Source: Phallusia mammillata
Lineage: Eukaryota
Assembly: GCA_965637545.1 (NCBI GenBank)
Contig: OZ281494.1
Coordinates: 6,882,001-6,946,000 of the forward strand
Direction: 5' to 3'
Length of the DNA: 64,000 nucleotides
Shown here: positions 6,802 to 63,400 of the stretch, piece after piece
Layout: the number at the start of each line of letters is the position of its first letter
Numbering within the stretch: the first letter of the stretch is position 1
The notes under the pieces: generated by a model
What the model was told of the DNA's origin: nothing
The model's database searches: none
The model's input: only the letters and a program-made list of their open reading frames with translations
Translations under genes and position numbers: made by a program

Positions 6802-9329
6802 ATGATGTTTGTAAAGTTTGTACCACTCTTTTTCCTTAGTGCTCTGACAAATGCACAAACAGATGACTTGCTGGCCCAACTGCAAACTAGATGCGGTAAG
6901 TTTTTCAGAAAACCTCATGGGACATTAGTTGGTTTTGAATGTATAATAATGCTCAATGATCCGCAAACAAACTGATAAAAAGTTTATGTATACTATTACG
7001 TCTTGGTACTTTTTAGAAAGTTCAAGCTGTGAAAATACGTTAGTTGGTGGAAAAGGGTAATTGACTGTAAAACGCTTTAATTGTAATTTGCCTTTTTTAT
7101 TAGAGGATGCCTTTAATCCTTCCAACGGAGATCTATCTTGTCCAACATTGCTCTGCGAAAAGGCTTCATCCGTGACATGCAGTAAGCATACGATTTTAAC
7201 ACTTTCCAAGGTTTTGTTAAATAAAACCTTTCGGGTATTTTCACCTTGGCTCTGTGGTTAAATAATGAAACAACCGTGTATATACATCTAATAATACAAG
7301 CGTCAAAGTAAATGAAAGTGGAAAAAAATCACTAAATAAATCTATTTCTTTTCTGCAGCTTTTGGGCCAGCAATCTTAAGTGAACCTTTTTACTTCGCAA
7401 AAGGATTATGTAAGTGTCCAAACTGTGTGTGTTTTTGAATGTATCAACTGAAAATAACTATAACCAACTGTGCGATTACCACCACAATAAGCAATATTTA
7501 AGCAACTTATGTAGGGTTAAACAAATATACCACAAATAAAAAGCATTAAATCATAGCAAAAACATGTAACCTTTTTGCACAGAGGTAACCAACTATTTGT
7601 CCCATAAACATTAATTGTATATGAAGAAATCATGGCTTTAGTTGTACGTTAAAATTTTCGCTAAAATGACACTTAAACGGCAAACATAAAAGTAGAATAT
7701 GCAACAGACTTTGGTTAATTTTTAATTTGTTTTTCAGGGGATAATAACAGTATTGTGCGCAGCAACATTACAGGTAAATAATATTTAAAGTAAGCAATCA
7801 GTTAAATAATGTTGTAACTTATATCTAACTAGAGCAGGTGTAAAAAACGGTTTTGATTTCTTGCTGTTGTCGACAGTGCGTCGTTCGTTTCAGTTTGCAA
7901 GTTACAGAAGAAACGAGAGTTGTGTATTATCCTGTCTACTTGTGCATATAAATTTGATTTTTTAATTTTTATACCGCCAATTTCAACATTGATGTGCGGA
8001 TTTGTATCCGCGGGCTCAGGTTTTGAAACCGAATTGCAATACATTACTACAAGTTTTTGAAATATATTTTAAGGATTAAAAACTATTCAAACAAACAGCT
8101 CATCGAATTTTGCACAAAAAGTTTTGCCAAGTGCAATGAAATTCTGTGTTCCATCTTTACCTTGTAGAGTTTTCGTGCGGTGGAAATGAATGTTGCCTAC
8201 GTCACATTAACCCAGCAGAAGGCCTTGGGCCAGGAGACGTTTCAGTAATAATGCAGTTTATAAATGCAGGTTAGTTAAACTTTGATGCAAAAATACAAAA
8301 AGATTGCTAAAACTTTGTTTCTTTTTTTATATTTTAGTAAATGTCCCGTCAACTGACATAACTGTCAACTTTGTGAACGTCGATTACTGTAAGTACGCTT
8401 AACTAAAACCTTATCATGTTTTGTGCTTTTAAAACGTATTTTACAGAATGCTTTTGCGGTACTATTTTAAAATGAAAAAAGTTTTTTTTTATCAATGAAA
8501 TACCACACATTTTTTGCACGAACGACCGTTTGGCATTTTTTAAACTTATGTGAAATTATCAAACCATTAATTTACAGGCGTTGGTAGATACGATCCAATC
8601 AATGTGGACCCGAATAAATGCCTTAATTTAACAGCTTTGTGCAGTAAGTTTCCATTTGTGATTTTACATGAAAGTTTGGTTGTGTTTTATATCTATGCCA
8701 TAAAATCATTTTATTTTAAATGTAGAGAATTACATGTCTGAAGCTATGAACCTAACCAATCAAAATGTAGCTAATGTAGAAGGCGTAGAAGTACCACACC
8801 GAAACGTACAAGTTAACATTACACATTATTGCATACAGCCCCTTTGGTGATAACAAATGCGACAACAAGTAAAGCAACAACAATACAAGATACAATAGAA
8901 GCAACTACACCAACAGAAGTTGCAACACAACAAGCAACAACATCGGCAGATTCTACAACATTACAGGAGACATCTACAGATGTCACAACAGCACACGCGA
9001 CAACTGATGATGCACCAAAGACTTCTGCACATGCTACAACTACACTGACGACAAATGCTGATGCACAGGAGACATCTACAGATGCTACAACAGCCTATAC
9101 GACAACTGCTGATGCACAGAAGACATCTGCAGATGCTACAACAGCACAGAAAACAACTACAGATGCTACAACTGCACGGAAGACATCACAAGATGCTACA
9201 ACTCAAGCTACAACTGTGAAAGCAACAACCTCACAAAACAAGACAATAAAAGAAACAGAAAAAGAAGGCAACATCGGAAACTTGGTAAATAAGTTAATTT
9301 TGTTAACTATTGCTTTCTTTCTTGCCTGA
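6802..9329 (+). CDS. Gene A: Cys-rich cap plus mucin stalk, no GAIN or 7TM, probable GPI anchor, 322 aa
   Basis: Exons 6802-6895, 7104-7181, 7359-7409, 7738-7773, 8168-8269, 8338-8388, 8578-8643 and 8839-9329, all phase 1, total 969 nt with an open frame. Signal peptide MMFVKFVPLFFLSALTNA, a 10-Cys cap paralogous to genes B-E, a Thr-rich stalk, and C-terminus EGNIGNLVNKLILLTIAFFLA*. An alternative ending is possible: a donor at 9285 spliced to 9780 gives STPWKRK*. Confidence 0.78.
8964..9210 (+). repeat. Coding tandem repeats in the gene A stalk (3 x 51 bp, then 3 x 30 bp)
   Basis: QETSTDVTTAHATTDDA / PKTSAHATTTLTTNADA / QETSTDATTAYTTTADA, followed by QKTSADATTA / QKTTTDATTA / RKTSQDATTQ. 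Confidence 0.8.
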
Positions 9330-11100: not shown

Positions 11101-11260
11101 CTGAACGTTTCTGAAATACCAATTGTATGAGGTTATCACAAAAGCAATAATAATGCACTATTATTGTGTCAAAAAAAATTTTTTAAGATGAACATTCTGA
11201 AATACCAAATGTTTGAGGGTATATGAAGAACGATAATAATAATAATGGATTGTCACAAGC
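11101..11260. repeat. Two imperfect ~87-bp-period tandem copies
   Basis: TGAACGTTTCTGAAATACCAATTGTATGAGG...AATAATAATG (from 11102) and TGAACATTCTGAAATACCAAATGTTTGAGGG...AATAATAATG (from 11189). Confidence 0.55.
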
Positions 11261-14200: not shown

Positions 14201-14675
14201 AAAATCCTTCTATGTGCGCAAAAATTGCATGGTAATGTTACGGTATAGGTGTAGCTATTAGCAGGCCGAGACGTTACGTCAAACACAACGGATATTGGAA
14301 GCTTCGAATTACACAGTGCAGTACTTGTCTGAATTGCAGTGAGTGAATTACAAATGCAGTACCGTATAGGCTATATAAGACAGTGTGCAGAATGAAAAGC
14401 AACCAAGTTTTATTAAGATTTTAACCACAATTTACAAAACAGCACGTTGCAAATTGTAGGGTTTTGTGCTTGACACTGTTTTGACAAATGAATGGCTTGA
14501 CTTGGTTCTTTGTAATGTAATTAATCAACACCTTGTAAAAATCACTCATGTTCGCAATCAGGAGACCTAGTCGGTTCTATCAGTACAAAGTTACATCGCA
14601 CAAACCTGCGTCATGCTTTTGCTCATTAATTTCTTAGCAATCGTTTATGCGCTTCTGGTTTAAGAGCGGGTATGT

Positions 14676-14718
14676 GACCAAAGCAGGTTTTTTTTTTTTT
14701 TTTTTGACCAAAGCAGGT
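14676..14718 (-). mobile_element. Orphan poly(A) retro-insertion with a 12-13-bp TSD
   Basis: GACCAAAGCAGG, then T18 (14688-14705), then GACCAAAGCAGGT. Confidence 0.7.
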
Positions 14719-15423: not shown

Positions 15424-17068
15424 GTCTACACGCTCAGGTTTTACTTGTGTTCGATATGCATTCTATAATATATGAACATAACGTTGTCTAAAGGAGTTTG
15501 AATGAATATAAAATGTTTGTGGTTGTAAAAGTTGTGGGCGTAAGTGAGGAAACTTGCGTTTTTAAAGGAAAGTAGGCGGAAACCTGTCGTTAAGTAAGTT
15601 ATCTAAGTTCAAATCGGAGTAATGCTGTTGATTTAGATTGACATCACAACAAACATACATTCTTGCCTCTAAAACCGTTTCGTAAAGACACTATTACAAA
15701 ACATTGTAGCTGAAAAGAATGTAGGCATTGTGTACGCTTTTAAGTGGTTTTTAATCAAAGTACTTTGCAAATATAGGTGCCAAGAGATCCTAAGGAAACA
15801 AATGGTTTCGAGAAATTTAAGATCACAAATTTTACTGGTTCCTTTATTGTTAATGATGCTGTTCAACAGCGGACTGCGAATAGTGTAGGTTAAATAGAAG
15901 TGAGTTTATGCATGCACTTACTCTATTGAAGGGACATATAAGAGCCGTTGCACATAAAGACGTCACTGCAGGCAACCCACGCATTTTTTTCCACCTACAC
16001 GACTTTCCATCCTCCATGTTTTACACACTATATCTCTGCAACAGTTGGCGCTTTGTACTGTACGTTACCTAATGGTATGTTGCATTTTTCACTTAATATT
16101 GCTCATTGCGTACGATGTGTTTAAGGAAGCATAAGTAGGTTTATGAAAAGTTACAATATCGTTTCTGCGCACAGAGTGTAGTATTTTATGCCCACAAACA
16201 AGCTTACCTGTGTATTTAGTTGTAATTGTCAGGGTATACTGGTGTGAACGGTGATACGATAGAAAATGATTCGCCGTGACAAATAAAGTTAGATTAAAAA
16301 GGCATGATACTTAATGTGATTTAAAAACTAGATATTTATAAACATTCTAAACATTCCTGCTAAATGTCATGTCAATTGCCAGTACACACAATGTACGTGG
16401 GTATTAAAAGCAGAATGAGGAGATGTTTAAGATTGTCGAAAATCTGAAAGGTTATTTTGATTTTCAATGTTAGTAACTCATATATGCGGACATATAATAA
16501 ATACAATAGCTCACTTATTTGGTTACTATAATAATTTAAAAACATCGGGTATAGGATGGACTGTTTGTGAGCGATAACTGTGCAAACGAAAATTTTTGTC
16601 ACAATCCATCATAACGAATGAAAGTAAATGATTGCAAACAAACGTGATGTACCGCCATGCAAACTGTGCCGGGCAACAGAACATAGATGTGTTGTTAGCT
16701 TCAAGTGATTTGTAGTTTTAAATTAAATATGTGACGTACATGAGAAAAGACAGGGACTTTCGCTGGAAAATGGGTGTTATTTCGCGGTCAAAAATTCATA
16801 GTGTTTTTTAACTTACATATAACTAGAGATGTTTACTAGGTTACTGTAGGTCAAAACTTTGTGGGTAAGTACAGCTCTACTGGTTGCATTTGATGCAGTT
16901 CTAATAAAGCATGGGGCATTAAATGTCTATAAAATAACATTTTGGTATTTGATTTTGAAGGTCATTTCAAAGTGTAATATGTAGGCTTAAACGTAAATGT
17001 AGAAACTATAACTTTGAACCATTTATGCCACGTGTGAAAAGAAAGAAGTTTAAGGAAAACTAATCACG

Positions 17069-20000
17069 ATGCTTTCAAAAATATTATCACTGCTTTTATT
17101 AATTGCCGCAACGGATGCACAATCGGATGAATTACTTCTTTGGCAGCGATTAAGATGCAGTAAGAAACATCTAAATACAAGTTAAATGTCATAAACATAA
17201 TATATCTTTGTAGTTTATTAACAGCATTTCATGAGTGAATAACAAGCTTGTAAAAACAAGTTTTTTTGCAAAATGTATACTATTTGCTTATCATTTTAAT
17301 GTACCTGTAACGTTTTTCAACCATTAGGTGTTTTGTGTATTTATTTAGTAAATTTTCCTTTTCTGTGCGTAAAACAAAGTTAAAACTAGAATAGTGGTTT
17401 TCCTATATATTGCCGGGTTATATATACTACATCATATTTAATGATGTATCACATATTCCATTTACTATATTCATAATGGATATATATTTGGCACCTACAT
17501 TTGATTGGGTCCCTATCTTTTTCCTGGCACTTTATAACATAATTGTTTCTGCAAGCATAATCTAATGGGTCCTCACCACTAGCGTATTTAGGGGCGGGGG
17601 GACAAGGTGCCTATATAGACAAAATATATAAAGACAAAAACAATATGTGTCCCCTTCCCATAATGAAGTGAGAAAATTAGACCCAAATGCTGTGAGACTT
17701 GTTCGCCTAACTCAGGGGTCGCCAACCCGCGGCTCCGGAGCCGCATGCGGCTCTTTGATCCCTCTGATACGGCTCAGTTTTTGAATTTACCAAATGTTGT
17801 ACATTTGAATAAAAATTATGTGACGATTATGCCGAACACAAAAGTCGAACACGAAAATTGAAGTGCAGTAGCATGACTGTACTCGCTTGTTGCAGTTACC
17901 TGCAAGCCCATCTCTATACCACCAAACGTGAAGTCTGAAAGAGGCAAACTGGCGGTGCGCAGGTTAATACGCAATATGAGACAATACTGTTTTTGTTTGC
18001 AGTGTGTGTGCGCGCGTAACAATAGCTGTTTGTTAATTGTTACGTAACAAACGCGTTAACAAAGGAATACAAATCTGCAAAAACAGAATATGCAACGCTA
18101 CGTAAAGTTGTTTTCTCTGCTGACGAGACTAGTATACCAGTGTGTCTAATATGCATTGAAACACTAGCTAACAACAAAAAGTCGAATGTCATAAGACTAA
18201 AAACGTTTTGCATTTTATTTTAAATTTTAAAACGACTTTGTGGCTCCCAGTGTTTTTTTCTACGTGAAACTGGTCCGAGTGGCTCTTTGAGTAGTAAAGG
18301 TTGGCGACCCCTGGCCTAACTGATTTGGAATTTGTTTAGGCATATTAAGCAGTCTTACAGCGGATGTGACAAATTGTTCAACATTACTGTGCGAAAAAAA
18401 TTCTTCGGAAGTGACGTGCGGTAAGTACATCGCTAAACCTTATCATGTGTTGGATAATGTTTTGATTTCCTTTGTTGTATGATGAAACTTAAAAACGCAA
18501 AAAAAACATGCATTCACTTGAAACAAATTCATGATTGATGTGAATAATATACGTAACCATTTTTTGTGTTTTTTACAGTTTTTGCGCCTGTAATTCCATT
18601 GGATCGATTTCGTACAAACATCAGTAAGTCAAAAACTTCAACTTATATCATATAACGTGCAAGGGATTAAATTGCAAACATCAGTCATACATTTATGGTT
18701 ACTAAACGATTACAAAAATGTCTTTAAAAAAACGAAGCCAATAAATAACATAAAATTCATTTTGAAACAGAAAAATGTAGAACAGAAGAAATATTTAAAA
18801 CAACTTTTTTAGATGCCTCTCTTCCAACATGTTACCGCGGAAGCGGAAATTGTAAGTACAAAATTTATTTGTTTTAAATTTCAAAATTTTATCGGACAAA
18901 CATCACTTTTGACAAAAACATAAATACTGCAGTATTTATTATTCGTAAAAGTGAATTTCCAGTAGAAAATCCATTATATAATGATTTATAAGAGATGCAA
19001 TTGTTACGTAAATCCAGTTAGTTTTTAATCTACATTTTGTTTTTTACTCATTTTCATTTTCGGGTTATTAATAACAAACTTTTGTTTTGCAAACTTTCAC
19101 TGAAGTTTACAGAGAAAAAACTACGCTCAAAAATCAGAGCAACGAGTTTCTTTCACGCGAGGGTAAAGCGATCATTACTGATAATTTGTGTGTTTTAAAA
19201 ACTAGTAACTTGGACCGATATATTTGTGTCCAAATGTAGGTTTATACCAGTTTTTTTTAACAAAAGTTTGTTTTAAACACCTTTTTTGTCAAAAAAAGAA
19301 GAAAAAACTGCAGTAGAGAGTCGTTTTAGTAATACGTTTTTTTAAATCAACGACTTCTCTAACGTACACGATAGCTTCAATGGAAAAAGTCAAAAAAACA
19401 CTAAATTTCACAAAGCGAGAACTTTGTTTGGGTACCCGCACGTTAAAGCAGCGATTTTTCCGCCCCCTACCTGCAATCGGAAATAAGTCTGGTAATTGCT
19501 TGGTACCTCAACGATTACGCTGAAATTTTAAATAAAGATCAAGAATTATTTTAAAAGTTTACCTATATAACATTTTTTGCATTAATTTTTTATTTTGACC
19601 TGTGAAAACAAAACAAACCTAAAAGGATAAAATTGCTGAATCAAGCCACCAACAGCCAAACTATGAAACCTATGTGTCACACACTATAGTGTATTTTAAA
19701 CCTGAAGTTTAAAGTACTTTCCATTGACCAAACATAACGAAGACTGTACGAAAACAATTGGTGGAAGAGGACCCACAATAATGTTGGGATTAATTGTTAA
19801 TATTGAATTTAAATTTAAACTAAGCTACTGCGGTTTTGAGACGGCCTGTGGCAAACGCGACTGTGTGACGACTTGGGGTATTTAATTCTCCCCCTTGCTT
19901 TGTAGGGGATACCGATACGATTAACGGAGCTAACATTACAGGTACTTTCTTGGTTATATATGTAAATGATGTGTTTAATAAAATAAAATCAAAACGCTTA

Positions 20001-23000
20001 ATTTTTGCAGCGTCTTCGTGCAAGGAACTGGATTGTTGCTTAACGCATATAAACTCGCCCAGTGATACGGAATATGATCTTTCCGCAGTTTCAGTAAACA
20101 TGATATTCATAAACGGCACAGGTTGGTAAACCTTTCAAAGAACAAACTCTATACACTTGCGCCTGCTCTATGTCATGCGATACTTGGTGCAGGATAATGT
20201 TCTAACTTGCATATATTACAGAAACAGTATCACAGGAATCAAATCTAAGTTGATTTTTTTCAGACCTAACAAAAAATGTTGCATTTAAGCTCAGTTTTTT
20301 ATGGCGAAACCTATACTCACCATTTAAATCAAGTTTTCCTAAAGGACGTTTGCTCTGTTTCAAAGCAAAATACGGAAACAACTTAAACAAACATGTCTCC
20401 CGTGTTTTATAACATGTGGTGTTATTGTGCTTGCATTTCAACAAAAGTTTTAACTTGAAGTTGTAACAAAAACGTTAAAAAAACATTTTTCCACACGAAG
20501 GTAACATACATTATATTAAAGTGTTTTTTAACTTTTTATAGAAATTGATCCAATCTTGGTTGGTCCGATCAATAATGTGAGAATCATCATTGTAAACTTC
20601 GACTATTGTAAGTAAACGCAAGCAAAACAACGTCATTTTGGTTGTGAAAAAGTTATTGTGTAATAGTTTTATTGTCAGACAGATCCAAAACTTTTGGTTG
20701 GCGTTAGCATTAGCATATTACAGTAAAAAAAACAGAATGTAGAACACTAACTAAGACAAGTTTCTTCAACAGGTCTTAGAGTTTCTACCGATTCACTTAA
20801 TGTATACCCAAACGACTGCCTCAATCTAAAAGATCTTTGTGGTAAGTTTCAATGTGTGCAAATATGCATGAAGCTTTTTTTTCCTATTTCTGTTGCACGT
20901 CGACATTTTTTTGACATGGAATCCCAATTAAATGACTTCGTTGCATGAAAGCTACAAGTATAGTATCACTCACTAGAAGACAATAGCTATGTAACTCTAG
21001 CAGTCCGCACTAGCGTAATGCAGCCAAACGTTACTCAACCTTGCACACAGCCTCTTTATCGACTCCAACAACAAGAGCTACAACAAGCCAAGCAACACCA
21101 GTAGCAACAAAAACAGAAGCCATGACACCACAAGCTACAACTGCGCTAACTCCAACAACACAAGCTACAACACAAGAAGCAACAACAATAGTAGCTACAA
21201 CGACAATCGCTGCAACAACAGAAGCCCTGACACCACAAGCTACAACTGTTCGAACTCCAATAAAGCAAGCTACAACAGTGCATATTTCAACCGCAGAAAC
21301 TACAAATGCAGAAACTTCGACTATAGTGGTTACAACATCACTTGCTGCAACAACACAAGTTACAGCGACAACGCAGGAAGCTACAACAACAATGCAGACT
21401 ATGGCACCACAGACCACGACAATGCAGACTACAGAAGTGAAAACTACAACCGAGAAAGCCACAACATCTAAGGCATCAGCATCACAAACTACACAAGACG
21501 AAACAACACAAGAACAAGGTCAAGAAGTAACTAATAGCGACATGGTAGTTGGTAGCGGATTAAACACAACTGTAGAAATGTCTACAACGCCACAGCCTGA
21601 CCCAACAGCAACACAAGCTGGTAACATCTCTGTGACAAACACTGTGACATCATCAGCACTTACGTTACTTATGCAAAACACAAACACTGTCACTGTACGC
21701 CAAATTACGTCTGGTATTACGAGCATGAGCATGGTTAATTTTGTTTCTAATTTAGCTAACACAACTACAAATGAGACACCCACAACCGCAGAAATACCGA
21801 CCAAAACCACTGTGACTGCGGAATCCACGACATCACATATAACAACACAAACGACTACAGCACCCACAGACAAAGAAACAACCACAGACAACGTAATAAT
21901 CTCAACACAAACAGAGAAAACAACTCAAGCGGCTACAATTGAAAAGACAACTACCCTAAACAAGGAAACAACTATGGAAATAACCACGGTACCCACAACT
22001 ACAGAAACAACCACGCTACTTACAACTGCAGATACAACGACTACACCCACAACTGCAGATACAACGACTGCAACCACAAGTGCGGAAACAACAACAGCAT
22101 TAACAATTGCAGAAACGACGACAGCACCTACAACCACAGAAGACTTAATTACAGAAACAATCACGCCAATTACATCTGCAGAAATAACAACTGCACCCAC
22201 AACCACAGAAACAACGACAGCAGACAAAACTACAGCTCTCACAATAGCAGAAACAACCACACCACTCATAACTGCAGAAACAACCACACTATCCAAAACC
22301 ACAGTAACATCCACAACACTCACAACTGCAGAAACAACCACACCATCCAAAACTACAGAAACAACGACCGCACCCACAACTACAGTATCAACCACAGCAC
22401 TCATAACCGCAGAAACAACCACAGCACCCACAACTATAGAAACAACCGAATCACCCACAACGCCAGAAACATCAATTTCATCCACCGCAAAGATCAACAA
22501 CGAAACAGAAAACATCACAATCGCAGTAATTCCCAATAACCCTGAAACAATAACAACCATTGGAATAACACAATCACGCATGATGTTGCCTGTTTCCACA
22601 GCTGCTGTCGCAACATCGACTGTGAGCACAATGAGTGCAGTAGCCGCTACACAATCAACAACTACAGTTTCATCAACAGCTTCTCGTGTGCCCGACAGCG
22701 ATATCTCAGATGTTGTCGAAAACGAGGCGATTGGGTCAATCCGCTCCATGCTTGGTTTGGTTGAATCCAGTGAAGTATTCGTGACCAGAGACGTCAGCAC
22801 GCCGATAGAAGGAAGATTTTCACAAGCTTACTTCTCTGGGGCAACGGTTAATCCCTCCGCCGTCGAAAGCCTGCTTCAAGTCGCAGTTGTTTCATCACAA
22901 TTCGATATCACTGCAGATGTAAGTGAGTTTGCTTCTGCCGAGGAAGCAGATGGACTCAGTACACAAGCTTTACCTTTCTCCGGTTCACCAGCCCTTAGCG

Positions 23001-26000
23001 TAACCGCTGTAGACACACAATCTCGCAGTATAGTCGAAGCCAAACTCAGTTACTCGATTCAAATCAACGCTACTGCTGATAGTGGTCAGACGGTCGCAAA
23101 TCTTGCCAGGACAAATAATAACAGCGGGACGTACGCGGTGACAAGAATCAACAAAGTAGAAACAAGATGCGGATTTTTCAACGCAACCCAAAGGAGGTTT
23201 TCGTCAAACGGTTGCACATTGCTTCCAAGCAACACAAGCGAAGAAGTTTCGTGCTTCTGTAACCACACAACGTTGTTTGCTGTCCTGCTCTCTGTTCAAA
23301 CCTACGAGGTCCCATCGACGGTCAAGGTAGGACTTAAGTAGCTTTAGTGAGATTTAAAGAAATAGAAATACGGGGACAATAAAACTATACAGCTGTTTAC
23401 AAGACGGGACTACGCTAAATCGATAAAGTAAAGTTTGTTGACAGTTTGGCTCACCATAAAGTTTGGACTATAAATATTTCATACAATTTACACCGCAACA
23501 ATGTGTTTGCTAAATACCTAATAGCGTCAAAAAATTTTATCAGAAAGCGCATAATTATGCTGCAAAAACAAAACAAGTTTTTTAATTGAAATTCGTGTTC
23601 CTAGTCGAACAAATCAAAATCTTATTCAATCTAGGGGTAAGCGATAATAGTAATGAACAAAAATCGAAAAACGAATAATATGTCGTACGCTGCAAGCATA
23701 TAGTTGTACGCTGCAAGCAGATTTAGAATTGCACACGGCTTTCTGTTACGTGAAATCTATTGACAGCAAGCTCGGGACAGACTATTTCCGGGGATTGAGC
23801 TGCCTTTGCTTATAACGTGGGGCCATTTGCGCGACTTCTTTGTAAACCCAACGTCTTGACGTTTTGTTTTTTAAAATTTCTTGCATGAAAACAAAAAATC
23901 AACCATTAGGCTATATTCAAAAAGATTGGCCTCGTTTTAGCAAATTGGGGCTGGCCCGTTCTTTTAACACTAAGTTACCTCTGAGTCAAATGTGACATCA
24001 TAAAAGAGTGGTTGTTACGTTGTGCATACGCATCAGGTTGAATACAACGTCCCACGCATACCATGGTGCAAGAGCGACTTTCTAATGTTTGTAAAGCACG
24101 AAACCCATTGTTTCATTTAAAGTACCTAAGTTATTGGGTTATCCTTTGGAATTTTTTTATTTACAAAAAATGGAACAAATTTTTTTATGAAAACGCCATA
24201 CAACAATGACAATAAATTTGACCCTTTCTATCAAAAACTGGACATTCATGTGTGTAAAACCCCAACTAAAAGGGGACTGACAGTTTTATTGAAAGGCACC
24301 CGAATATTTGTGGAAAACCCCGCTGCGCCACAATGGCTTGTTTCGGGAGAAACACGGCACCTTTTTTCCGACCCGCTTCTAACAGGTTTGCCCTGGGAGC
24401 AATGCCCCTTGTGACGTCAATGGCGTGTCTTATATCGCGTTACGCATGACTAGACTTCACTGCCGCGTCCCAAGCGCTGGAGTCTCAAGGGTTGGGTAGC
24501 GAAGCTTTGGAGCCCAGACCACATCTCGCCGCATACTAAATATTTGAAGCACAGAGACTCGTGGAAACAATTCAAGTTGCGTTTTTAACCTTTTTAGTGT
24601 CATAAAAGACGAGTAAGACGAAACGAGGGGCTTGCTTTACAACTGTAAAATTTTCGTATCGTGTCCCAACGGTTAATGAAACCCAAAACGACACGAACTT
24701 TATTTTTAGTGGACGAAATTCCAACCGGGTTATTTGTGCAACAAAATGCTAAAGCGGGCCATTGCCATAGGTTTAACAACACAGTATTTGCAAAACCTTG
24801 TGTGTTCGGTGTTAAAGGCGTCGTTAGGTTTGTTGGTACATTACAAACGACTCAAAATGAACAACGGTGTTTAGCTTAATAGGATGAATATTGCTGGAAC
24901 AACTGATTTCGGTCTGATGTACGAAAGCCGCTTGCATCTCTTGACCAAAAGTCGATTTTGATGTACCGTAGCCGCTTTCCATTCTTAACTAAAAGTCGAT
25001 TTTGATGTAGCAAAGTCGCTCTTAACTAAAACTCTCTTCACAGTTGCTGTCATACATCACCGAGTCGATCAGCATATTGTGTCTCATCATCACCATTGCC
25101 ATACTTATGACAGTCCGGAAGAAAGTGAGAAGTGACAGAACGGTTGTGCAAATCAACCTCTCGGTCGCCCTCCTGTGTTTGCACATTTTTAACCTCTTCC
25201 AGGACTTGGCGGTCGAGGACAAGCGAGCGTGCGAGTTCGTTACCGTGACAACGCACTTTTTTCTGTTGGCCTCGGGTAGGTTCCGTTATTATTATGCACG
25301 CCAGTGATATTTTGACATGGTCACCAGAAATGACAAACATCGACTGTGACTTTCAATGCGTGAAAACGGTCGGTGTTTTAGGGACTCGCAACACGCCCTT
25401 TGATTGCAGTTATGGGAAAAAAAGCTAAGTTAGCTGTGACTATCAACTTTCAATGCATAAAACCAAATTAGCTTTCAAATGTTAGAATGACGTTGGCTGA
25501 CTAGCGATTTTCCAACTAAGGTGCATGGACGCCTATAAGAGACCTGCATGTTGTGTTGGCTTGGAAGTCCTCAAATCCGAAAACCAAAAAGTAAACAATA
25601 CATAAACTGGCTTTATCCGCAATAGTGGTAGTTTAATAGAATGGGCCGTACATTTCGTCACACATTGTCTTTTAGACCGATTTTTACAAAACCTCTTATG
25701 TGATGTTATTGTAAAGAATTTCTAGACATGCATTTGCATTCCGATTGTCAGCTAGCATAATTCATGTCGTAAAATTCCTACTGTTCACTTCAAAACAAAG
25801 AAAACTAAGTATGTAAAACGTGACTTTGCACTGTCAAACACTGCAGTTGTATTGCTAAGCTCTGCAGTCGTCGACGAATAGGGATTGCTATTATATTTGA
25901 CAACTTTAAAGTATAATTATGCAACAGGAACTTGGATGCTTTGGGAAGGCCTGACACTTTTCATCAAAACCACCGACAAAATACTTTCGCTGAACAAGAA

Positions 26001-27523
26001 AAACCCTCGCAAAGTGGCGGCCACAAAGTTGGCATTGGGTTGGGGAATTCCTCTGCTGATTGTGGTACTAGCCAGTGCCATTGGTTTCCCCACAAACCGT
26101 TACATGGATTCCGATCAGTACAGCAACAACTACTACAGATGCTGGGTAAGTTTAACAGCCTAAAATCATAAATAGAAAAAAATGTCACCGAGACACAAAA
26201 TTTTGTTTTAAATTTAAAAGGAAAGAAAACTTAACGGCTATTTGATTTGTCGTTATCCTTGAAATTGTCGCAATGGAACGTCAAATTTTTAGATGCAGCA
26301 TTTTAGTATAATGTGTACGATTTTCTGTCTTGCACGTTGACCTGAACAGCAAACAACCAAAAGGGACGACTAAAGCGGGAAACTGCAGCAACAAATAATA
26401 TGTCCGGTCATAACAAACAGTGGTAACCAAATCGTTTTTTCTCTGCAGGTTGGAACTGAGTACAACGCTCTTCTCGCCTCGGTTATCATTCCTATGATAA
26501 TCATCTACGTTGTCAACATCCTAATCGCCTTCAAAGTGATGTGGTTTGTCCACAAACTTCGGAGTAGCGCTAGAGAACTAAAACCGTCCAACGGTGCTCA
26601 CCGCGGATCTAACGTAGGCGCCGCGGTTCGAAGCGACGCCAAAAGCGTTGGCGCCACGCTCAAAGTTTTTCTCCTACTCATCCCGGTACTGGGGGTACCA
26701 CTGCTTTTCGGGTTTTTGACAAGTAAGAATTCGTTTCAATGCTCGTTTGGTATCTGTGCAATGCCTTATGTGCAGAAATCGAAGTAAACTGTTTAATAGT
26801 ATACACATCCATTTAATAAGGTATAGCTACCAGACGTAATGCATAAACGAGCATTACTCTTACAGCAGATTTTATTGTAGATAATCGACGTTTCGATGTC
26901 ATACACAAGTCACATTTATCAGAATAATGACATATCTTCAAAACGGCGTTTAATATTTATGATAAAAACTGATGAAAGAACAATAGTCATTTATGCAAGC
27001 TAGTGGTTTGGATGTATAGATAACCAATATTTCCACATACTTGCAGACTTTTCAAAAACTTGGTAGTAAACGCGTATAGCATTGAATTTTTGCTACAGCA
27101 ATACACATCAGCATCAACGCATATGAACATTTGCAACCATTATTGCAATTGTGTAGGTGTTAACAAGCTTGCAGAGCAAAGTTTGCAATTACCTGCAGTG
27201 ACAATATTGTCTTCCTGAACCGCCACTTAAATATAATTTGCATTGTAGGCATTGAACCATACGAAGCATCTGTGGTGTTCATGTACATCAACGTCATCCT
27301 TAATGGACTGCAAGGTTTATTTCTCCTTCTCGTATACTGCGTGTTTGGAACCGAGGTTCGGGAGGCCTGTTCCCGTTATGTACAAAGAGTCAAGCTGCGA
27401 TACACAAGTGAACCTCCAACCCACAACCCCAGCAAGGGAACGCCAAGCACCCACTCGACTAACACAAGTTCAGGATCGGGAAACAAAACCAACAGTTTGC
27501 CGGAAAATCAACACAGAATCTAG
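17069..27523 (+). CDS. Gene B: adhesion GPCR (cap, ~550-aa mucin stalk, GAIN/GPS, 7TM), 1270 aa
   Basis: Exons 17069-17159, 18340-18420, 18579-18623, 18813-18851, 19906-19941, 20011-20121, 20542-20607, 20773-20841, 21051-23326, 25044-25275, 25928-26145, 26449-26722 and 27249-27523; total 3813 nt with consistent phases. GPS reads CGFF...FSSNGC...CFCNHTTLFAVLL (23168-23290). 7tm_2 motifs include INLSVALL, WMLWEG, LGWGIP, RCW and NGLQG. Confidence 0.9.
17713..18313. mobile_element. hAT MITE, 601 bp, gene B intron 1
   Basis: TIRs CAGGGGTCGCCAACC / GGTTGGCGACCCCTG; perfect TSD GCCTAACT. Confidence 0.88.
21960..22480 (+). repeat. Degenerate coding repeats (TTAETTT/TTAPTTT) in the gene B stalk
   Basis: Recurrent ACTGCAGAAACAACC and GCACCCACAACYACAG units; the translation is built of AETTTA/APTTTE blocks. 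Confidence 0.75.
24940..25031. repeat. Short imperfect tandem repeat just upstream of the first 7TM exon of gene B
   Basis: CTTGACCAAAAGTCGATTTTGATGTA..., CTTAACTAAAAGTCGATTTTGATGTA..., then a third partial unit CTTAACTAAAA ending 12 nt before the acceptor at 25043. Confidence 0.7.
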
Positions 27524-39463: not shown

Positions 39464-39611
39464 GGTTAGGTCATTTACAATAAAATAACTATTTATCACA
39501 CATTTATCACGCAATATTTTATTCTTTAACCATTAAACTTTGTGTACAGCACTTCAAGCTTACTGTGTTTGCTAAATTGATTTGGCAAAGGTGCATCCAG
39601 TTAAATACGCC

Positions 39612-42600: not shown

Positions 42601-45600
42601 CAACGTCAGTAACGCAGTTTAATGCAACTACAAGCCAACCTACAACAAATCCATTGTCAGTAGCAACTTTAACCCTGCAGTCTGTATCTTCAATATTTTA
42701 CAGTACAACTGCAAGTACACGTCCATTAGCACCAACAAGTCTTAGCGCCGTTAGCAGATCAGTTAACGTAACGAGGTCAGAATTCATCAAACAGGCGGTC
42801 CAGGCTGCTAATAACTCAACCGCTACTGAAGTAAACCTGCTCAATTTGACAACAGTGGGAAACAAAACTATTGTCACAAGCAACAACACCAGTCCAGTGC
42901 AACTGAAACTTTCCCAAACAAGCGTAAATGGACTTTCACCACAGTTCGGAGGATCATGGGATGTTGTGATTGTCGTAGTGGAGTTTAAGCTACCTCAGAA
43001 TGTACAAACATTTACAGCACAAACTTCCCATAGCGGAATAAAAACCGAAGTTTTGCCATTCCCTGGTGCCCCAACAATCAGCATAACTGTCATTGATGCA
43101 AATTCACACAGTAAGGTCAGTGCAAAACTGAACTACGTTATATCGTTGCAAAACACCACCTCCCAAGTACAAGCCATGCTCAACCAAATAATCAACAACA
43201 AAAGCAGTAACGGGAAGTATGGAGTAACCAGAATCAACAAGATAGAAACCAAATGTGGATTTTTTGATACAACGCAGCAGAGGTTTTCAACCAGAGGTTG
43301 CTCACTGCTTGCAAGCAACTCAAGCCAGGTTTCATGTTTCTGCAACCACACAACCTTGTTTGCGGCTTTGCTTTCCGTTCAGTCCTTTCCCATACCGTCA
43401 GAAGTTGTGGTAAGCACATAATGTAATTAAGTTCTTATATTATTTGTCAAGTATTTCCAAATATACATTAGGCATAAATAGATTGCAAAGGTGAGTACTA
43501 TTCACCGGCAAGTTTAAATAATTCACTACTCCAGCCTCCATAAGTGCACAAAATTAAGCTTACAATTATAGCAGTATGTTTATAAATAAGGCAATAAAAA
43601 CCAACATGTATTTAAGTGTTTGAAAAGTTTTATCATGATTAAACAGTGGCTATTATTCGCAAGGCTGCTTGGCTGCGTTTTTTCATTGTTTACGCTTCAA
43701 CTACATACTGGCGTTAAAATATCAGGAAGGAAAAGCAGCAGCACAGTAACGCTTTCGGTGTACAACACATCAATAACAAACACTTTACGTAGAGCAACTA
43801 CCCGGAACTTTTGATGTTAATGAAGCTCAAGCGGCAAGCGTCGTTACAAACAACTCATTTAAAAAATGACACAAAACTGATCATACCGTTGTGCTTTAGG
43901 GCTACACTGTCGCACTCTTAATCTTTAGGTCTCTGTTCTGCAATAAAAGAAATTACATTAGTGGTACAGTCGCTGCATAACAAAATATTACAACCAAATG
44001 CAACACAATCAGCCACAGTTTTATTGTAACTGCATGAAAACATTTTTATCATACTGCATGAAAAATACGATTTAATGAAATCGTTATAAAATTCGATTTG
44101 AAACATATGTGTAAACCAGTGATTCTCAAACTGTGTGCCGCCGCACACTAGTGTGTCGTGAGAGATTTCCAAGTGTGCCGCGAAATATTCTCTATTTTAA
44201 AGTGCAAACATTCCCTGGTATTTTAGGACATGATGACGAAATACTGGTGCACATGACAACGTTTCAAAGCTCATACTTTTGTTATTGGTAACAAAAAGCG
44301 TTCTTACCCACCACAGTACTCTTGAAAGTTAACATTATATGATCAAATTCTGTTATGTTTACCTGCGAAGTGTGGCGCGGAAGGAAATTTTAGTTCTTTA
44401 AGGCGCCGCATGCTTAAAAAGTTTGAGAACCACTGGTGTAAACGTATTTTTATTTTTATTTGCAGTTTCTCTCCTACATTACTGAAGCAATCAGTATCTC
44501 TTGCCTCATTATCACAATATCAATACTGATGACAGTCAGAAAGAAAGTGAGAAGTGACAGGACAGTTGTTCAGATCAACCTCTCCGTCGCCCTCCTGTGT
44601 TTTCACATCCTAAATCTTGCCAACGTGTGGGCGTTAGTGGACAAACGTCTGTGTGAAACAATGACCATTCTCACTCACTTCTTCTTGCTTGCAACAGGTA
44701 AGCTCAGAAGATGTATGTCAGAAGTAAAGTAATTCATCTCCGTGGTTTTGCAGTTCACCGAATAGCACATAAATACCAGACGAATTTACCCAATGCATGT
44801 TGGAACGTTTAAATTGTTGGAATTTGAAATTTAAACAGTTTTTGGTGCAAGTTGCTGTCCCTGTTCGGCCTGCGTGAGGTCAAGTAAATTAAAATATAAA
44901 TGAGAAAAACAGGCCTGTTTAAGCTGTGTATGAAAACGGCAGTGTTGCTTTCCATTTGAAAACAATGCCACTTTTTCCATATTTTACGGTAGTGACGCAC
45001 GTCCGTATCCGAACAGGTTGTCTTACCCTAAATGTCTAAATAAAATTAATACGGGGTAAAATTAAGTTCAAGATATTGTTTTATCGGCCCTCCAACACAA
45101 TCCAGTTTTCTTATGTGGCCCCTATTAAAAATAATTGCCCACCCCTGATCTAAAATTATATACACGCAGGTACATGGATGCTTTTGGAGGGCATCACTCT
45201 GTACTTGAAGACTACTGATCGAATCCTGACCTTGAACAAGAAGAGTCCTCGCAAAGTAGCGGGCACCAAGTTGGCATTGGGTTGGGGAATTCCTTTGCTG
45301 ATCGTGCTACTAGCCAGCGCCATTGGTTTCCCCACGAACCGCTACATGGATTCGTACGTCAACAATTACTACAGATGCTGGGTACGTGTGGGTTTTGTAA
45401 GGGAAATGACTTCGAGCTGTTACAGGATTACGATTGTGGTTGGCCCAATTTTTCACACAGTATGAATAATAAAGAAAACTCTATACAGAAATGTATGACA
45501 ACAAGTGACAATTAGATGCCAAAAGCTAAAGAATGCCCTAAAGTTGACAAAACTTTGATGAAAAAGTGATTAAACGTTCCGTAAAACTAAATCACATTTT

Positions 45601-46776
45601 GCAAACGAATAGAGTAAAATTGAATACAGTAAACTTTCCAATAATAAAAAAAATCAAACAAGGCAAACGCAATTAGAAGACCTCAGCTTATTTAAGAGAT
45701 AACAGTAACAAAACATCCAGTACCACCTCTTTTAACGTTAGTCATGAATGATCAAATGTCTCCTGTCATAGGTGGGAACACAAAACAAATTCCTGCTCGG
45801 GTCCGTTATTATTCCCATGGTAGTATTTTACGCCACGAATGTCGTCATCGCCATCAAGGTTATCTGGTTTGTCCACAAGCTGAAAAGCAGTGAGCTGAAG
45901 CCCTCCGCGTCCCGATCGTCGTCGGCTAACGCTGAGAATATCGGCGCAGCAGTGAAAGTCTTTCTTATGTTGTTTCCGGTTTTGGGGCTTCCCCTGTTCT
46001 TTGCATTCATGACAAGTAAGTCACGTGGTTTGATGAAATAGTTTGCTTTGGCTTGGAAGCGAATCTGTCGATCAGGTTTTGATCTTAAACCGGACCCTTA
46101 AACTCACCTAGCCGTTGCAGATTGTTTAAGTGCAATGTTGGTGAAAAAACATGTGTTCCGTGCTTGCACAAATAAAACCCTAGAGAATTAAATTAAAAAC
46201 ACATATATACCTTGCCATATGGAAATGCTTACTGCTGACCGACTATTTCAGTGTGAAGCACTCATATGCGTAGCATCATATTGGGATTCCTATCACATAT
46301 TTTACACCCTGAGATTTGTCACAGATTAAATTTACCTTGTCTTGCAAAAAAGTAGAGCAAAATGACACGACCCAAAACAATTTAACTTCCGCAAGGCTAT
46401 TAGCTTCCCAACTCATCAACAGTGCAATATTTATCATCTGTTTAAGCCTTCAGTCCTTAACCTCACTGTTTTGTTCATTGAAAGTTAGCAAGCAAAAGTA
46501 ATTACAGCGCTTAACTTTTTTTAGTCTCAATTAAACACGTTCCTCTTTGCAGGCATTGAGCCGTACGAAGCATCAGTGGTGTTCATGTACATCAACGTCA
46601 TCCTCAATGGGTTGCAAGGTTTATTTCTATTGTTTGTGTACTGTGTGCTGTGTAGCGAGGTTCGTGAAGCAGCTGGGAGGTCGTTTGAGAGAATTCGGCT
46701 ACGGTACTCAAAGGAGGAATCGACCAAACTTCACACAAGGTCATCCCATAACGCCCCTTCAGTGGCGATGACCTGA
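39612..46776 (+). CDS. Gene C: adhesion GPCR (cap, ~100-aa stalk, GAIN/GPS, 7TM), 787 aa
   Basis: Exons 39612-39723, 40362-40424, 40620-40673, 41024-41059, 41269-41367, 41796-41837, 42116-42208, 42457-43409, 44466-44697, 45170-45381, 45772-46015 and 46553-46776; total 2364 nt, open. GPS reads CGFF...FSTRGC...CFCNHTTLFAALL. Confidence 0.9.
44117..44435. mobile_element. hAT MITE, 319 bp, ending 30 nt before a gene C acceptor
   Basis: TIRs CAGTGATTCTCAAACT / AGTTTGAGAACCACTG; perfect TSD GTGTAAAC. Confidence 0.88.
45060..45147. mobile_element. Truncated hAT MITE (right end only)
   Basis: It ends in TTGCCCACCCCTG with internal CGGCCC/GTGGCCC motifs like those of 46797-47144. I found no left TIR or TSD. 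Confidence 0.45.
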
Positions 46777-46796
46777 TAGAAACGAAGCCTTTAGAT

Positions 46797-60400: not shown

Positions 60401-63400
60401 AGGTTAAAATGTAGTAAGGAATTATATTTAGCTTCGGTCGAAAGTCGGACAACTCTACAAGGGAATTTCAAAACGACCATTCTGTACGTCAAAAAGTTTG
60501 AACACCACTGCCCTTGGCCTGGGAAATAATCTATGCGTCCTAAAATGTGTCGATAGACCGTTTAGTGGCCTTTATAAACAAAAAGGTTCACCACCCCTGG
60601 CCCAAACTGTTGCACTGCCAGCCAACTAACAGTAGGCAGTGTTTACATTGCATTAAATTTGAACGTTAATAAAATACGATGTAGTAGCCGTGTTTGTCAC
60701 TACCACCCACTTGTAGCCGACATGTCTTGTTGATTGCACATTTAACAACTTACGTTTATGGGCGTTTTGCCGCAAACAAAGTCATGCTGCAAAACACGCT
60801 GGCTTGTATAGGGATCCCGTTAAAACAAAACAATAAAAACTTTCGCTTTTCAAATTGGTACACAACGTTAAAAAAACAGCAAAAATCAGCGCTCGCTTGA
60901 AACAAATGCAATCGGCCTGAGTAAGACAAACCGAAAAACGCAATAAGGCGTATAACATTAACAAATAAAAGAGTGCAAAACCCGATCGTTCAAATTATGT
61001 GTACAATAAATATATGTTACTTTAAAAATAAAATTTCGCTTTGACTGAAGTGTAAACACGGCTCTTGCTGATCCAACCTTTAACAAATGACACATGACAC
61101 TTTAAGCTACTATAGGGCTGTTTTATTTCAAAGAAATTTAAGAGAATCCTTAGCACGAAATAGAGAACATAAGTCTCATATTATTTACGCTTGAAAAGTA
61201 TGTTGTATTCATATTTATATTTGTTTTACAGTTTCACAAAAAGTCAAGATTTTCATCCAACACTATGAAGCATGTAAGTGTATGAAATGTAAAATGGCCA
61301 GCACAGTTAACTACGTATCGTTTGCATTCTTTAAAAGTAAAAACATGTGAGTAATATTACCAGCTTAAAAATAATCTATTAATGTACGAAGGTGTTCCTG
61401 CTTCTCATGACCCGTATCCAGCAGCAACATACCTAAACAATAATCCAACACAATGTCTCAACCTTTCCCACTATTGCAGTAAGTATCAATTTCTTGTATA
61501 GTTACCATGGTATTAATGGTGTTCAAATTCTGATGAGACAGATTTATTGTAGTTTAGGCTATTTGATTTTTATTAGGAATTACACTTACAATAAAAAAAA
61601 TTTTTTTGCCCGATATTAGTCCATAACCAATCTTTGTTAGGTTATAAACTATACGTGACAATTTTTAAAAATTTCGTCAACACTAATTTGGATATTTAAT
61701 AAAGGTCCTGTATGGCTTTTTTATTTTATTTCAAATCTTTTTAGCAATCTTTACCTTTTTATATTGTAGCGTTTTGGCGCATAGTTCTTTAACACACAGT
61801 ACATTCTAGTACTGTACTGATGTTATTTTGTTTTGTTTTCCAATCACGAAAAATCTTCTGAATATTTCTATTTGAATACCGAATTTTGTCACATATATTC
61901 CACAAATTAGTCAAGCCTCCCCCCACAGATATTCAGATAACGTTTTTCACTCAAGATCCATAAAACCTGATAATAAACACAAACACGCCTTTGCAAATCA
62001 TTTTATATGGGTTCAAGTAAAAACCCCAGACAGTGCTTAAGTAGATTTGTTCAATAAAAATAGGATGTATAAATTAGCTATAGCACAGATACAAAAAAAA
62101 TGTTGACATTTGTAGACACGACAAGTACGACAACGGCTGTGACGACAAGTATGGCTACTACTACTCAATTAACGACAGATCTAACAACCACGATGCCGCT
62201 TTCGACCTCAGACTCAACAGCTTTTATTACATCTATGCACCCAGCAACAGGTTAGAAAAGTTATTTGCCAATTTGACAGAGTGAATTACCAAATAGTTTT
62301 TTATATTGATTATAATTTACTTGTTCGTTACTAACTCATTAAACAGTTTAATCGTAGTACAATTTATCAAAGCAGGTGTGAGAAACCTATTTTACCGTGG
62401 GCCGCATAATTTGCACAATGTTATAATATTACCGAACCGAGGGTCCACAAAAAATACTTCGCATCAAAAAATGTTGGATATAAATCGACAAAAAATGACT
62501 AAGGAAAATGCTTATACATGAACATGCGGGTCCCAGAAATAGTCAATCAGGTCGCAGGTGGCTCACGGGCTGTGTTCCCTAATCCTTCCAAATTGTGCAA
62601 AAACTTGAATACATAAACCGGTATTTATAAAACAACCCAGTTAAAGCAGTGGTTCTCAAACATTATTTTTTTAAAACGGTCCCTTTGTTATTATTTCGAG
62701 GGCTCGCAGTCCTAAATGAGAATAAGCATAAATGTGAATTTCAGACAAACGAAAGTTGATTGCAAGATTTTAGCTAGTAAATGCAACATTGCGCATAATA
62801 ATGACCCAAAGACAGCTTGTGACATCACAGGCAAAAAAAGCATTGCAATTGTGCGCGAACAATTGCATTTTTGATAGTTGTCATTCAATAAAGGCTATTG
62901 TTTAGCAATCGACAGTCGATTCTCAATTCGAATTTGATTGAAATTTATTCAGTGGCACAAACTGACGCTACATAAAATTATAGGATTACTTCAACCTTTT
63001 CGTGTCCGCCAAAAATTGCCTCATAGGCCCCTTAAGGACCGCAGACCCAGTTTAAAAACCGCAGAGTAAAAGCATAAGTTTGCTATAAGTCTTAATCACA
63101 CGGCGGGAAGTAAACATAGCTAAACTGCATGTTCCAGGTGAGCCAGAGCTGCAAGGCTATATCCAATCCGAGTTGATTGAAATCGAATTGTCCGGAAACC
63201 AAGGGGAAGGAAAACTGTCCGAAATATCATTTAATGTGGAAACCACAGATCCGAACATTGGTTCCGAAGTAATGAATGCGAGTTTAAGAGCTAACTCATC
63301 GATAGTTAAGATAATCGCCGCCCAGCTGCAGGCAAATGGTGATTTGTCACAATATACTAAAGGTACACCCAATGGACACTACACAAATAAGTTGCAACCA

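What the first reader, a model, noticed from the sequence alone, without database searches (positions are those of the whole stretch)
6856..61478. Shared ~130-aa Cys-rich cap domain that I cannot assign to a known family
Seen in all five genes: C-x(6-12)-C-x3-LC-x(8-9)-C-x-F[AG]P...W-x14-C-x4-CC[LM]-x2-I...[MI]-x-[FL]...C...CL[ND]L-x3-C. The Trp codon (T|GG) and one Cys codon (T|GY) are split across introns in every paralogue, and the Trp exon is always exactly 36 nt, which strongly supports the models. The spacing does not fit LU, EGF, sushi, TSP1 or Ig patterns as I know them. Because it is spread over 36-111-nt exons, ORF finders miss it entirely. Inference: possibly an undescribed ligand-binding module.
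Basis: partly seen in the sequence, partly recalled or inferred. Interest (0 to 1): 0.82.

Follow-up and report, generated by a model that had tools for sequence, protein, structure and literature searches.

The report
Sea-squirt receptor head domain, unassigned
Five neighbouring sea-squirt genes, four of them adhesion-type G-protein-coupled receptors, start with the same ~130-residue, ten-cysteine domain built from tiny exons; it also occurs in two other sea squirts and matched no described protein family in the tests I could run.

Summary
All five + strand genes (A-E) encode a 124-137-residue domain with ten aligned cysteines. It sits behind a signal peptide and is spread over seven exons whose introns are all phase 1 with AG/GT borders. 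One exon is exactly 36 nt in all five genes.

Corrections:
- Gene B has Arg (A|GG), not Trp.
- In gene A the C3-C4 spacing is 7.
- Gene E's last cap exon starts at 61392, behind a weak acceptor.
- A sixth, decayed copy lies at 1-494.

The genome is an ascidian close to Phallusia. B-E are adhesion GPCRs (GPS + 7tm_2). A is cap plus Thr-rich stalk plus hydrophobic tail.

The domain is real and older than this array. A profile of the five caps finds two Phallusia mammillata proteins that run across the e5-e6-e7 junctions. It also finds a Ciona intestinalis receptor N-terminus (24 bits; best of 2000 shuffles 8.3). The Ciona gene has the same exon layout, the same phases and the same split Trp and Cys codons.

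Pfam, PDB sequences and the ESM Atlas gave nothing for the Ciona homologue. AlphaFold2 without an alignment failed (pLDDT 35). The spliced caps have no reference, so no profile or fold search was run on them. "Undescribed" is therefore supported but not proven, and ligand binding is inference.

The parts
6802..8643 (+). Gene A cap: exons 6802-6895 (signal peptide + Cys1), 7104-7181, 7359-7409, 7738-7773 (36 nt), 8168-8269, 8338-8388, 8578-8643
   Evidence: Exon models with AG/GT borders, all introns phase 1, ten Cys
8839..9329 (+). Gene A last exon: Thr-rich stalk ending in a short hydrophobic tail and a stop. No GAIN domain or 7TM follows.
   Evidence: ORF 8829-9329; phase-matching acceptor at 8839
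17069..20841 (+). Gene B cap: exons 17069-17159, 18340-18420, 18579-18623, 19906-19941 (36 nt), 20011-20121, 20542-20607, 20773-20841. Arg (A|GG) stands where the others have Trp.
21024..27451 (+). Gene B remainder: large Thr-rich stalk + GAIN/GPS exon (open to 23341; acceptor 21024 or 21051), then 7TM and C-terminal exons at 25053-27451
   Evidence: ORF 21041-23341; Pfam GPS; tblastn with gene D pieces
39612..42208 (+). Gene C cap: exons 39612-39723, 40362-40424, 40620-40673, 41024-41059 (36 nt), 41269-41367, 41796-41837, 42116-42208. Eleven Cys.
42457..46767 (+). Gene C remainder: stalk + GAIN/GPS exon (42457-43421), then 7TM and C-terminal exons at 44460-46767
50378..52672 (+). Gene D cap: exons 50378-50510, 51034-51099, 51245-51298, 51450-51485 (36 nt), 51749-51838, 52339-52380, 52592-52672
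52873..55417 (+). Gene D remainder: short Ser/Thr stalk + GAIN/GPS exon (open to 53579), 7TM (53704-54591, read through one in-frame intron), C-terminal tail exon
   Evidence: Pfam GPS and 7tm_2; ORFs
57427..61478 (+). Gene E cap: exons 57427-57526, 57950-58015, 59156-59209, 59390-59425 (36 nt), 59500-59604, 61232-61273, 61392-61478
   Evidence: The last exon's start is supported by the Phallusia protein P0007.
63089..63802 (+). Gene E GAIN/GPS exon. Its 7TM lies beyond the window end.
   Evidence: Pfam GPS
1..494 (+). Decayed sixth copy, like gene A: promoter and exon 1 joined exactly to exon 5 (exons 2-4 and their introns absent), then part of exon 6. There is a frameshift in exon 1.
   Evidence: Cap profile hit of 31 bits at 234-338; frames. 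blastn: 1-237 matches 6650-6896, 237-427 matches 8167-8365, 433-494 matches 8390-8454.

Best explanation
The cap is a genuine extracellular, disulfide-rich protein domain. It has ten conserved cysteines (so probably five disulfides) and spans 124-137 residues from first to last Cys. By sequence it is so far seen only in phlebobranch ascidians: this genome, Phallusia and Ciona.

It is encoded by the end of the signal-peptide exon plus six small exons separated by phase-1 introns. It forms the N-terminal tip of a tandemly duplicated family. In four genes it sits on a Thr/Ser-rich (mucin-like) stalk above a GAIN/GPS domain and a secretin-type 7TM, which makes an adhesion GPCR. In one gene it sits on a stalk with only a hydrophobic tail.

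The most likely role is the ligand- or surface-binding head of the receptor. Binding at the tip of a stiff glycosylated stalk would pull on the GAIN domain and expose the tethered agonist (TTLFAVLL...), as in other adhesion GPCRs. The receptor-less gene A product would display or compete for the same ligand.

Shown: the domain exists, is conserved and sits in this position. Inferred: disulfides, binding, force transmission and the role of gene A.
For: - Five intact seven-exon models with canonical splice sites, uniform phase 1 and ten aligned Cys.
- GPS and 7tm_2 lie downstream in B-E.
- The best 7TM relatives are ascidian proteins: Phallusia mammillata at 70-79% identity, Ciona, Clavelina.
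- The cap profile finds Phallusia P0007 and P0140 at E about 1e-15. Their sequences run continuously across the e5/e6/e7/stalk junctions.
- The cap profile aligns collinearly with residues 16-117 of Ciona P0142 and keeps W-x14-C. Score 24.3 bits against at most 8.3 in 2000 shuffles.
- The Ciona gene (L001) has the same exon layout: every junction read (e1 to e6) is phase 1, the Trp codon is split T|GG and a Cys codon T|G, and it has a 30-nt mini-exon.
- No known family was found by Pfam, PDB sequence search or the ESM Atlas.
- The literature reports most Ciona adhesion GPCRs with no recognised N-terminal domain.
- Caps are the most diverged part of the paralogues: 25-42% identity, against 36-51% for GAIN and 40-71% for 7TM compared with D. 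That fits a recognition surface.
Against: - No transcript of this species covers the exons. RNA-like runs hold none of gene D and only a repeat in B's intron 1.
- No confident structure: AlphaFold2 without an alignment gave pLDDT 35.5.
- The window's own spliced caps could not be given to Pfam, a profile search or a structure tool, so 'no known family' rests on one Ciona homologue, two half-domains and single exons.
- Nothing tests binding.
- The GPS motif reads H-T-T instead of the usual H-L-T/S, so autoproteolysis is uncertain.
- D's signal peptide is weak, and E's last acceptor is weak.
Confidence: 0.6

Rival explanations
1. The cap is a strongly diverged member of an already named disulfide-rich fold, for example a PAN/apple- or MANSC-like module or a beta-sandwich lectin-like domain. 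It would then be new only at the sequence level.
For: Lineage-specific 'orphan' ectodomains of adhesion GPCRs have turned out to be known folds once structures were available; the N-terminal domain of GPR56 is one case (my knowledge). The stretch C-x4-C-x7-9-C-x-F-[AG]-P resembles the C-x3-C...C-x-[AS]-F core of PAN/apple modules as I recall it, which is a lead only. The sensitive tests could not be run (one search failed; no profile search).
Against: Pfam at E<=10 gave no PAN, MANSC, LU, EGF, sushi, CUB or lectin hit on the Ciona domain, the Phallusia halves or the e5 exons. There was no PDB sequence match. Atlas structure neighbours were unrelated, with TM <= 0.43. The spacing after C-x-FAP (about 35 residues to the next Cys) does not fit PAN as I recall it.
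Confidence: 0.35
2. The cap is not one domain but two independent modules: a small four-cysteine knot (Cys1-4, exons 1-2) followed by a beta-rich six-cysteine module (exons 4-7).
For: The cysteines cluster as 4 + 6, with a variable Cys-poor linker (exon 3). The decayed copy at 1-494 joins exon 1 directly to exon 5 in frame at the junction. Clavelina shares only the first part's motif and its split-Cys intron.
Against: All five genes and Ciona keep both parts together, in the same order and exon layout. No protein with only one part was seen. The exon 1-5 copy is otherwise decayed.
Confidence: 0.15
3. The small exons are not used: they are mis-modelled or belong to dead genes, and the receptors start downstream.
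For: There is no RNA support in this species. One Ciona annotation calls the cap as a separate 118-residue gene and starts the receptor after it. Some splice sites are weak (E e7 acceptor; the A e5, B e5 and E e5 donors).
Against: 35 of 35 exons are open with matching phases in five paralogues that are only 25-42% identical, which decay would not preserve. The Phallusia proteins join e5-e6-e7 to the stalk, GAIN and 7TM in one chain. NCBI's Ciona model XP_026694790.1 joins the cap to the receptor. A truly decayed copy (1-494) looks different.
Confidence: 0.05

Closest known systems
Unclassified, Ciona-specific adhesion GPCRs (Kamesh et al. 2008, PMC2396169); e.g. Ciona intestinalis XP_026694790.1 (P0142)
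   Same: Same receptor subfamily: the closest 7TM relatives. The N-terminal domain is homologous, with the same exon layout and split codons.
   Different: In Ciona the domain is shorter in the middle and has CC at the exon 2/3 junction. It has C-x5-C instead of C-x4-CC, a 30-nt instead of a 36-nt mini-exon, and lacks the CLNL-x3-C ending. The paper recognised no N-terminal domain in these receptors.
EGF-TM7 receptors (ADGRE: CD97/EMR) and other adhesion GPCRs with a binding head on a mucin-like stalk
   Same: Architecture: N-terminal cysteine-rich binding module, Ser/Thr-rich stalk, GAIN/GPS, 7TM. The likely way of working is the same: ligand capture at the tip, force on the GAIN domain.
   Different: The head is not EGF. 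There was no Pfam EGF hit, the cysteine spacing is different, and it is one ~130-residue unit instead of ~40-residue repeats.
Ly6/uPAR (three-finger) domain
   Same: Small, extracellular, 8-10 cysteines with an adjacent CC pair. It is also found both on GPI-anchored proteins and on receptors.
   Different: The cap is about 50% longer, lacks the N-terminal C-x2-C and the C-terminal CC-x4-5-CN, and has CC in the middle. There was no Pfam UPAR_LY6 or Activin_recp hit. The pattern comparison is from my memory of the family.
PAN/apple and MANSC modules
   Same: An N-terminal position in membrane proteins. A C-x3/4-C ... C-x-[small]-F stretch resembles the PAN core as I recall it.
   Different: There was no Pfam hit. 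The cap has ten rather than 6-8 cysteines, and a long beta-like stretch lies between the motif and the next cysteines. Fold not tested.

Membership tests
Adhesion GPCR (genes B-E) | GPS motif / GAIN domain directly before the first transmembrane helix | tested here: met
   Pfam GPS at E 5e-9 to 6e-6 in the exons of B, C, D and E
Adhesion GPCR (genes B-E) | Secretin-type (family 2) seven-transmembrane domain | tested here: met
   Pfam 7tm_2 at E 2e-19 in D. Homologous exons are present in B and C. E's 7TM lies outside the window.
Adhesion GPCR (genes B-E) | Canonical autoproteolysis triad H-L-[S/T] at the GPS | tested here: not met
   The motif reads C-F-C-N-H-T-T in all four genes. Thr replaces Leu at position -1. 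Cleavage itself cannot be tested here.
Adhesion GPCR (gene A) | GAIN/GPS and 7TM | tested here: not met
   The last exon 8839-9329 ends in a stop after a Thr-rich stretch and a hydrophobic tail. Gene A is a cap-stalk protein, not a receptor.
Any Pfam-A family (for the cap) | Match above or near the gathering score | tested here: not met
   No family at E<=10 except zf-POGZ at E 0.28 (12 bits against a cut-off of 27). Tested on Ciona P0142:1-140, Clavelina P0138:1-165, two Phallusia halves and three e5 exons. The window's spliced caps were not tested because they have no reference.
Ly6/uPAR (LU) | 70-90 residues, C-x2-C near the start, CC-x4-5-C-N at the end | tested here: not met
   The alignment of the five caps shows none of these features. 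No Pfam hit.
PAN/apple, MANSC | PAN fold with its 3-4 disulfides | not testable with these tools
   The only model has pLDDT 35.5. No Pfam hit.
Ascidian receptor cap (proposed here) | Ten Cys in the order C-x6-12-C-x4-C-x7-9-C ... [W/R]-x14-C-x4-CC ... C ... C-x6-C, behind a signal peptide | tested here: met
   Met in all five genes. Ciona keeps the order but varies in three places.
Ascidian receptor cap (proposed here) | Seven-exon layout, all introns phase 1, Trp codon split T|GG and Cys codon split T|GY | tested here: met
   Window genes; in B the split codon is A|GG. Ciona locus L001, junctions e1 to e6 read.

The most novel reading that the evidence does not exclude
The cap is a new disulfide-rich fold that arose within ascidians. 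It spread as a phase-1 exon set onto adhesion GPCRs and a receptor-less stalk protein, and it diversifies quickly as a recognition surface (for microbes, self/non-self or settlement cues).
Probability: 0.3. Interest if true: 0.6.

Novelty: new variant of a known kind. Interest (0 to 1): 0.45.

Why it matters
Adhesion GPCRs are defined by what their N-terminal heads bind. Most of the many ascidian-specific members have been described as having 'only a GPS domain'. This finding shows that at least one such subfamily has a conserved, structured head that gene finders and domain scans miss, because it is cut into 30-111-nt exons.

That gives a concrete object for a structure and for ligand hunting in a chordate model group. 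It also corrects gene models: one Ciona annotation splits the head off as a separate gene. The uniform phase-1 layout, and the same head on a receptor-less stalk protein, make it a tidy example of a mobile exon-set module.

It does not change the understanding of how these receptors work.

Tried and rejected
- Word search with B's GAIN region found nothing. So did the cap half of Phallusia P0007, apart from itself, and the Ciona cap region. That database shows only cluster representatives, and the Ciona representative lacks the cap, so these blanks say little.
- I first took window 38087-38179 for gene C's first exon, from a weak match to A. I rejected it because it has no in-frame ATG and the wrong donor phase. 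The exon at 39612-39723 fits.
- I rejected the acceptor at 61422 for E's last cap exon in favour of 61392.
- Clavelina P0138/P0002 N-termini: the cap profile scores -1.5 and -1.2 bits, no better than shuffles. Pairwise against Ciona gives p about 0.08. Only the C-x4-C...CC[LF]G motif and the split second Cys at the exon 2/3 junction are shared. I left it as a possible remote relative.
- Aligning exon fragments to the Ciona domain to feed structure prediction failed. MAFFT misplaced the fragments, pairing the window's exon-5 CC with Ciona's exon-2 CC against the exon structure. I did not use these alignments.
- AlphaFold2 on the Ciona domain alone gave pLDDT 35.5, so I ran no fold search on it.
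- RNA: two run searches and one lay of four RNA-like runs showed contigs only on a repeat in B's intron 1 at 17380-18315.
- Scanning the Ciona and Clavelina loci exon by exon with the cap profile gave nothing significant.
- The spliced cap proteins exist only in my scripts and have no reference. I did not type them into Pfam, PDB, structure or Atlas tools.
Full report
**What the window is.** The window has about 37% G+C and no gaps. Its long ORFs on the + strand are Thr-rich stretches that end in a C-F-C-N-H-T-T-x-F-A-[VA]-L-L motif, followed by hydrophobic segments. Pfam calls GPS in four of them and 7tm_2 in the one tested. A full-library search with gene D's 7TM ORF gave only 137 hits. The best named ones are Phallusia mammillata (70-79% identity), Ciona intestinalis and Clavelina lepadiformis adhesion-GPCR-like proteins. 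The genome is therefore an ascidian close to Phallusia, as earlier notes on other windows of this genome also say.

**Checking the observation.**
- The two most distinctive motifs occur exactly five times, all on the + strand. C-x4-CC[LM]-x2-I lies at 8176, 20019, 41277, 51757 and 59508. CL[ND]L-x3-C lies at 8619, 20817, 42184, 52648 and 61454.
- Starting from these and the other motif pieces, I listed acceptors and donors around each block and chose those that agree in phase across paralogues.
- Each gene has seven exons (coordinates under parts). Exon 1 carries an ATG, a hydrophobic signal sequence and ends one base after the first Cys codon. Exons 2-7 each begin with two bases and end with one base of a split codon, so all introns are phase 1.
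- Exon 4 is 36 nt in all five genes.
- The Cys before the last exon is split T|GY in all five.
- The residue at the exon 3/4 junction is Trp (T|GG) in A, C, D and E, but Arg (A|GG) in B.
- From first to last Cys the domain spans 124-137 residues with ten aligned cysteines.

**Independent support for the models.**
- It found the N-termini of two Phallusia proteins, P0007 and P0140, at E about 1e-15. They are N-terminally incomplete, but they run in one chain from the end of exon 5 through exons 6 and 7 into the stalk, GAIN and 7TM.
- P0007 is 58% identical to gene E over this stretch. It reads ...HYEAC-VP... across the exon 6/7 junction exactly as my 61392 model does.
- The profile also aligned collinearly with residues 16-117 of Ciona P0142 (XP_026694790.1) and kept W-x14-C. 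The score of 24.3 bits compares with a maximum of 8.3 in 2000 shuffles of the same residues.
- I fetched the Ciona locus (L001) and mapped the protein onto it. It has the same exon layout, and every junction I read (e1 to e6) is phase 1:
  - exon 1 ends in phase 1 just after the first Cys;
  - exon 2 ends one base into the codon after a Cys;
  - exon 3 ends in T before a mini-exon that starts GG (split Trp), and that mini-exon is 30 nt;
  - exon 6 ends in T of a split Cys codon.
- Shared intron positions and phases between species whose proteins barely align are strong evidence of common descent, and of a real, spliced domain.
- Clavelina's receptor N-terminus shares only the first motif and the split Cys at the exon 2/3 junction. 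It is not significant by sequence.

**What surrounds the cap.**
- In B-E the last cap exon is followed by Thr/Ser-rich stalk exons of very different length (about 600 residues in B, a few dozen in D), then the GAIN/GPS exon and the 7TM exons.
- Gene A has only a 160-residue Thr-rich exon that ends in a short hydrophobic tail and a stop.
- Cap identity between paralogues is 25-42%. Measured against D, GAIN is 36-51% and the 7TM segments 40-71% identical. The head is the fastest-changing part.
- A sixth copy at the very start of the window is decayed. DNA 1-237 matches A's promoter and exon 1, and 237-427 matches A from exon 5 onward. Exon 1 is thus joined to exon 5 at the splice junctions. There is a frameshift in exon 1 and a truncated exon 6.

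**Is it a known domain?**
- Pfam at E<=10 found nothing relevant in the Ciona cap region, the Clavelina N-terminus, the two Phallusia halves or three window e5 exons.
- phmmer of the Ciona domain against all PDB chain sequences gave nothing below E 0.78.
- The ESM Atlas gave no feature hit. Its own model's neighbours had TM <= 0.43 and were unrelated bacterial proteins.
- The Ciona GPCR survey lists 24 unclassified adhesion receptors and states that 21 of 30 have a GPS domain as the only recognised N-terminal domain (PMC2396169).
- A later classification paper and two more literature searches turned up no description of such a domain.

**Limits of that answer.**
- The window's own spliced caps have no reference, so I did not hand them to Pfam, PDB, Atlas or structure tools.
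- I could not assemble a usable alignment for structure prediction, because fragments misaligned.
- AlphaFold2 on the single Ciona sequence gave pLDDT 35.5, so no fold search was meaningful.
- A diverged known fold therefore remains a live rival.

**Expression.** RNA-like runs of this species hold none of gene D's sampled words. They hold a few per cent of gene B's 10 kb. Laid on 16900-22899, all their contigs fall on 17380-18315 inside intron 1, at high depth and with many mismatches, which points to a repeat and not the gene. Expression in this species is untested.

**How it most likely works.**
- Shown: a signal peptide, a ten-Cys domain, a mucin-like stalk, GAIN/GPS and 7TM, in that order.
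- Inferred from what is established for adhesion GPCRs: the N-terminal module binds a partner, the O-glycosylated stalk holds it away from the membrane, and pulling on it releases or exposes the tethered agonist that starts right after the GPS (here TTLFAVLL).
- The unusual Thr at position -1 of the GPS leaves open whether the receptors are cleaved.
- Gene A would present the same head without signalling, as an anchor, decoy or co-receptor.
- The divergence of the heads among neighbours suggests different or shifting ligands.

**Verdict.** The domain is real and shared by at least three phlebobranch ascidian genera. In every test I could run it is unassigned to any described family, but the decisive profile and fold tests remain to be done. 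I rate it a new variant of a known kind: an adhesion GPCR family with an undescribed head domain. Its interest is moderate.

Noticed in passing
window 1-494 (+): Decayed A-like copy in which exon 1 is joined exactly to exon 5 at the splice junctions, while the exon 5/6 intron is kept. It could be a deletion between phase-1 introns or a copy made through a partly spliced, exon-skipped transcript.
   Followed up: partly
window 22700-23341, 42573-43421, 53019-53579, 63173-63802 (+): The GPS motif reads C-F-C-N-H-T-T-x-F-A in all four receptors, and Phallusia and Ciona relatives also read H-T-T. Thr stands where adhesion GPCRs usually have Leu before the cleavage site.
   Followed up: no
window 25927-27451 and 31837-33315 (+): The 3' half of gene B's 7TM plus its C-terminal exon is present twice, about 5.9 kb apart, with near-identical ORFs (26494-26787 and 32376-32708).
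   Followed up: partly
window 17380-18315 (intron 1 of gene B): A repeat covered at high depth, on both strands and with many mismatches, by contigs of four RNA-like runs of the same species. It is probably a transcribed transposable element.
   Followed up: no
L001 7256-9257 and 10001-13944 (Ciona intestinalis GCA_018327825.2): This annotation calls the cap as a separate 118-residue gene and starts the receptor (596 aa) after it. NCBI's XP_026694790.1 (751 aa) joins them.
   Followed up: partly
window 53704-54591 (+): Gene D's 7TM reads as one 295-codon ORF because an intron of roughly 50 codons between TM3 and TM4 is in frame and free of stops. Relatives match it as two stretches (about 2-80 and 133-288).
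   Followed up: no
L002 10001-14510 and 16257-20474 (Clavelina lepadiformis): Two adhesion GPCR genes lie in tandem. The first has a Cys-rich N-terminus with C-x4-C...CC-F-G and the same split-Cys intron as Ciona. The second was not examined.
   Followed up: no
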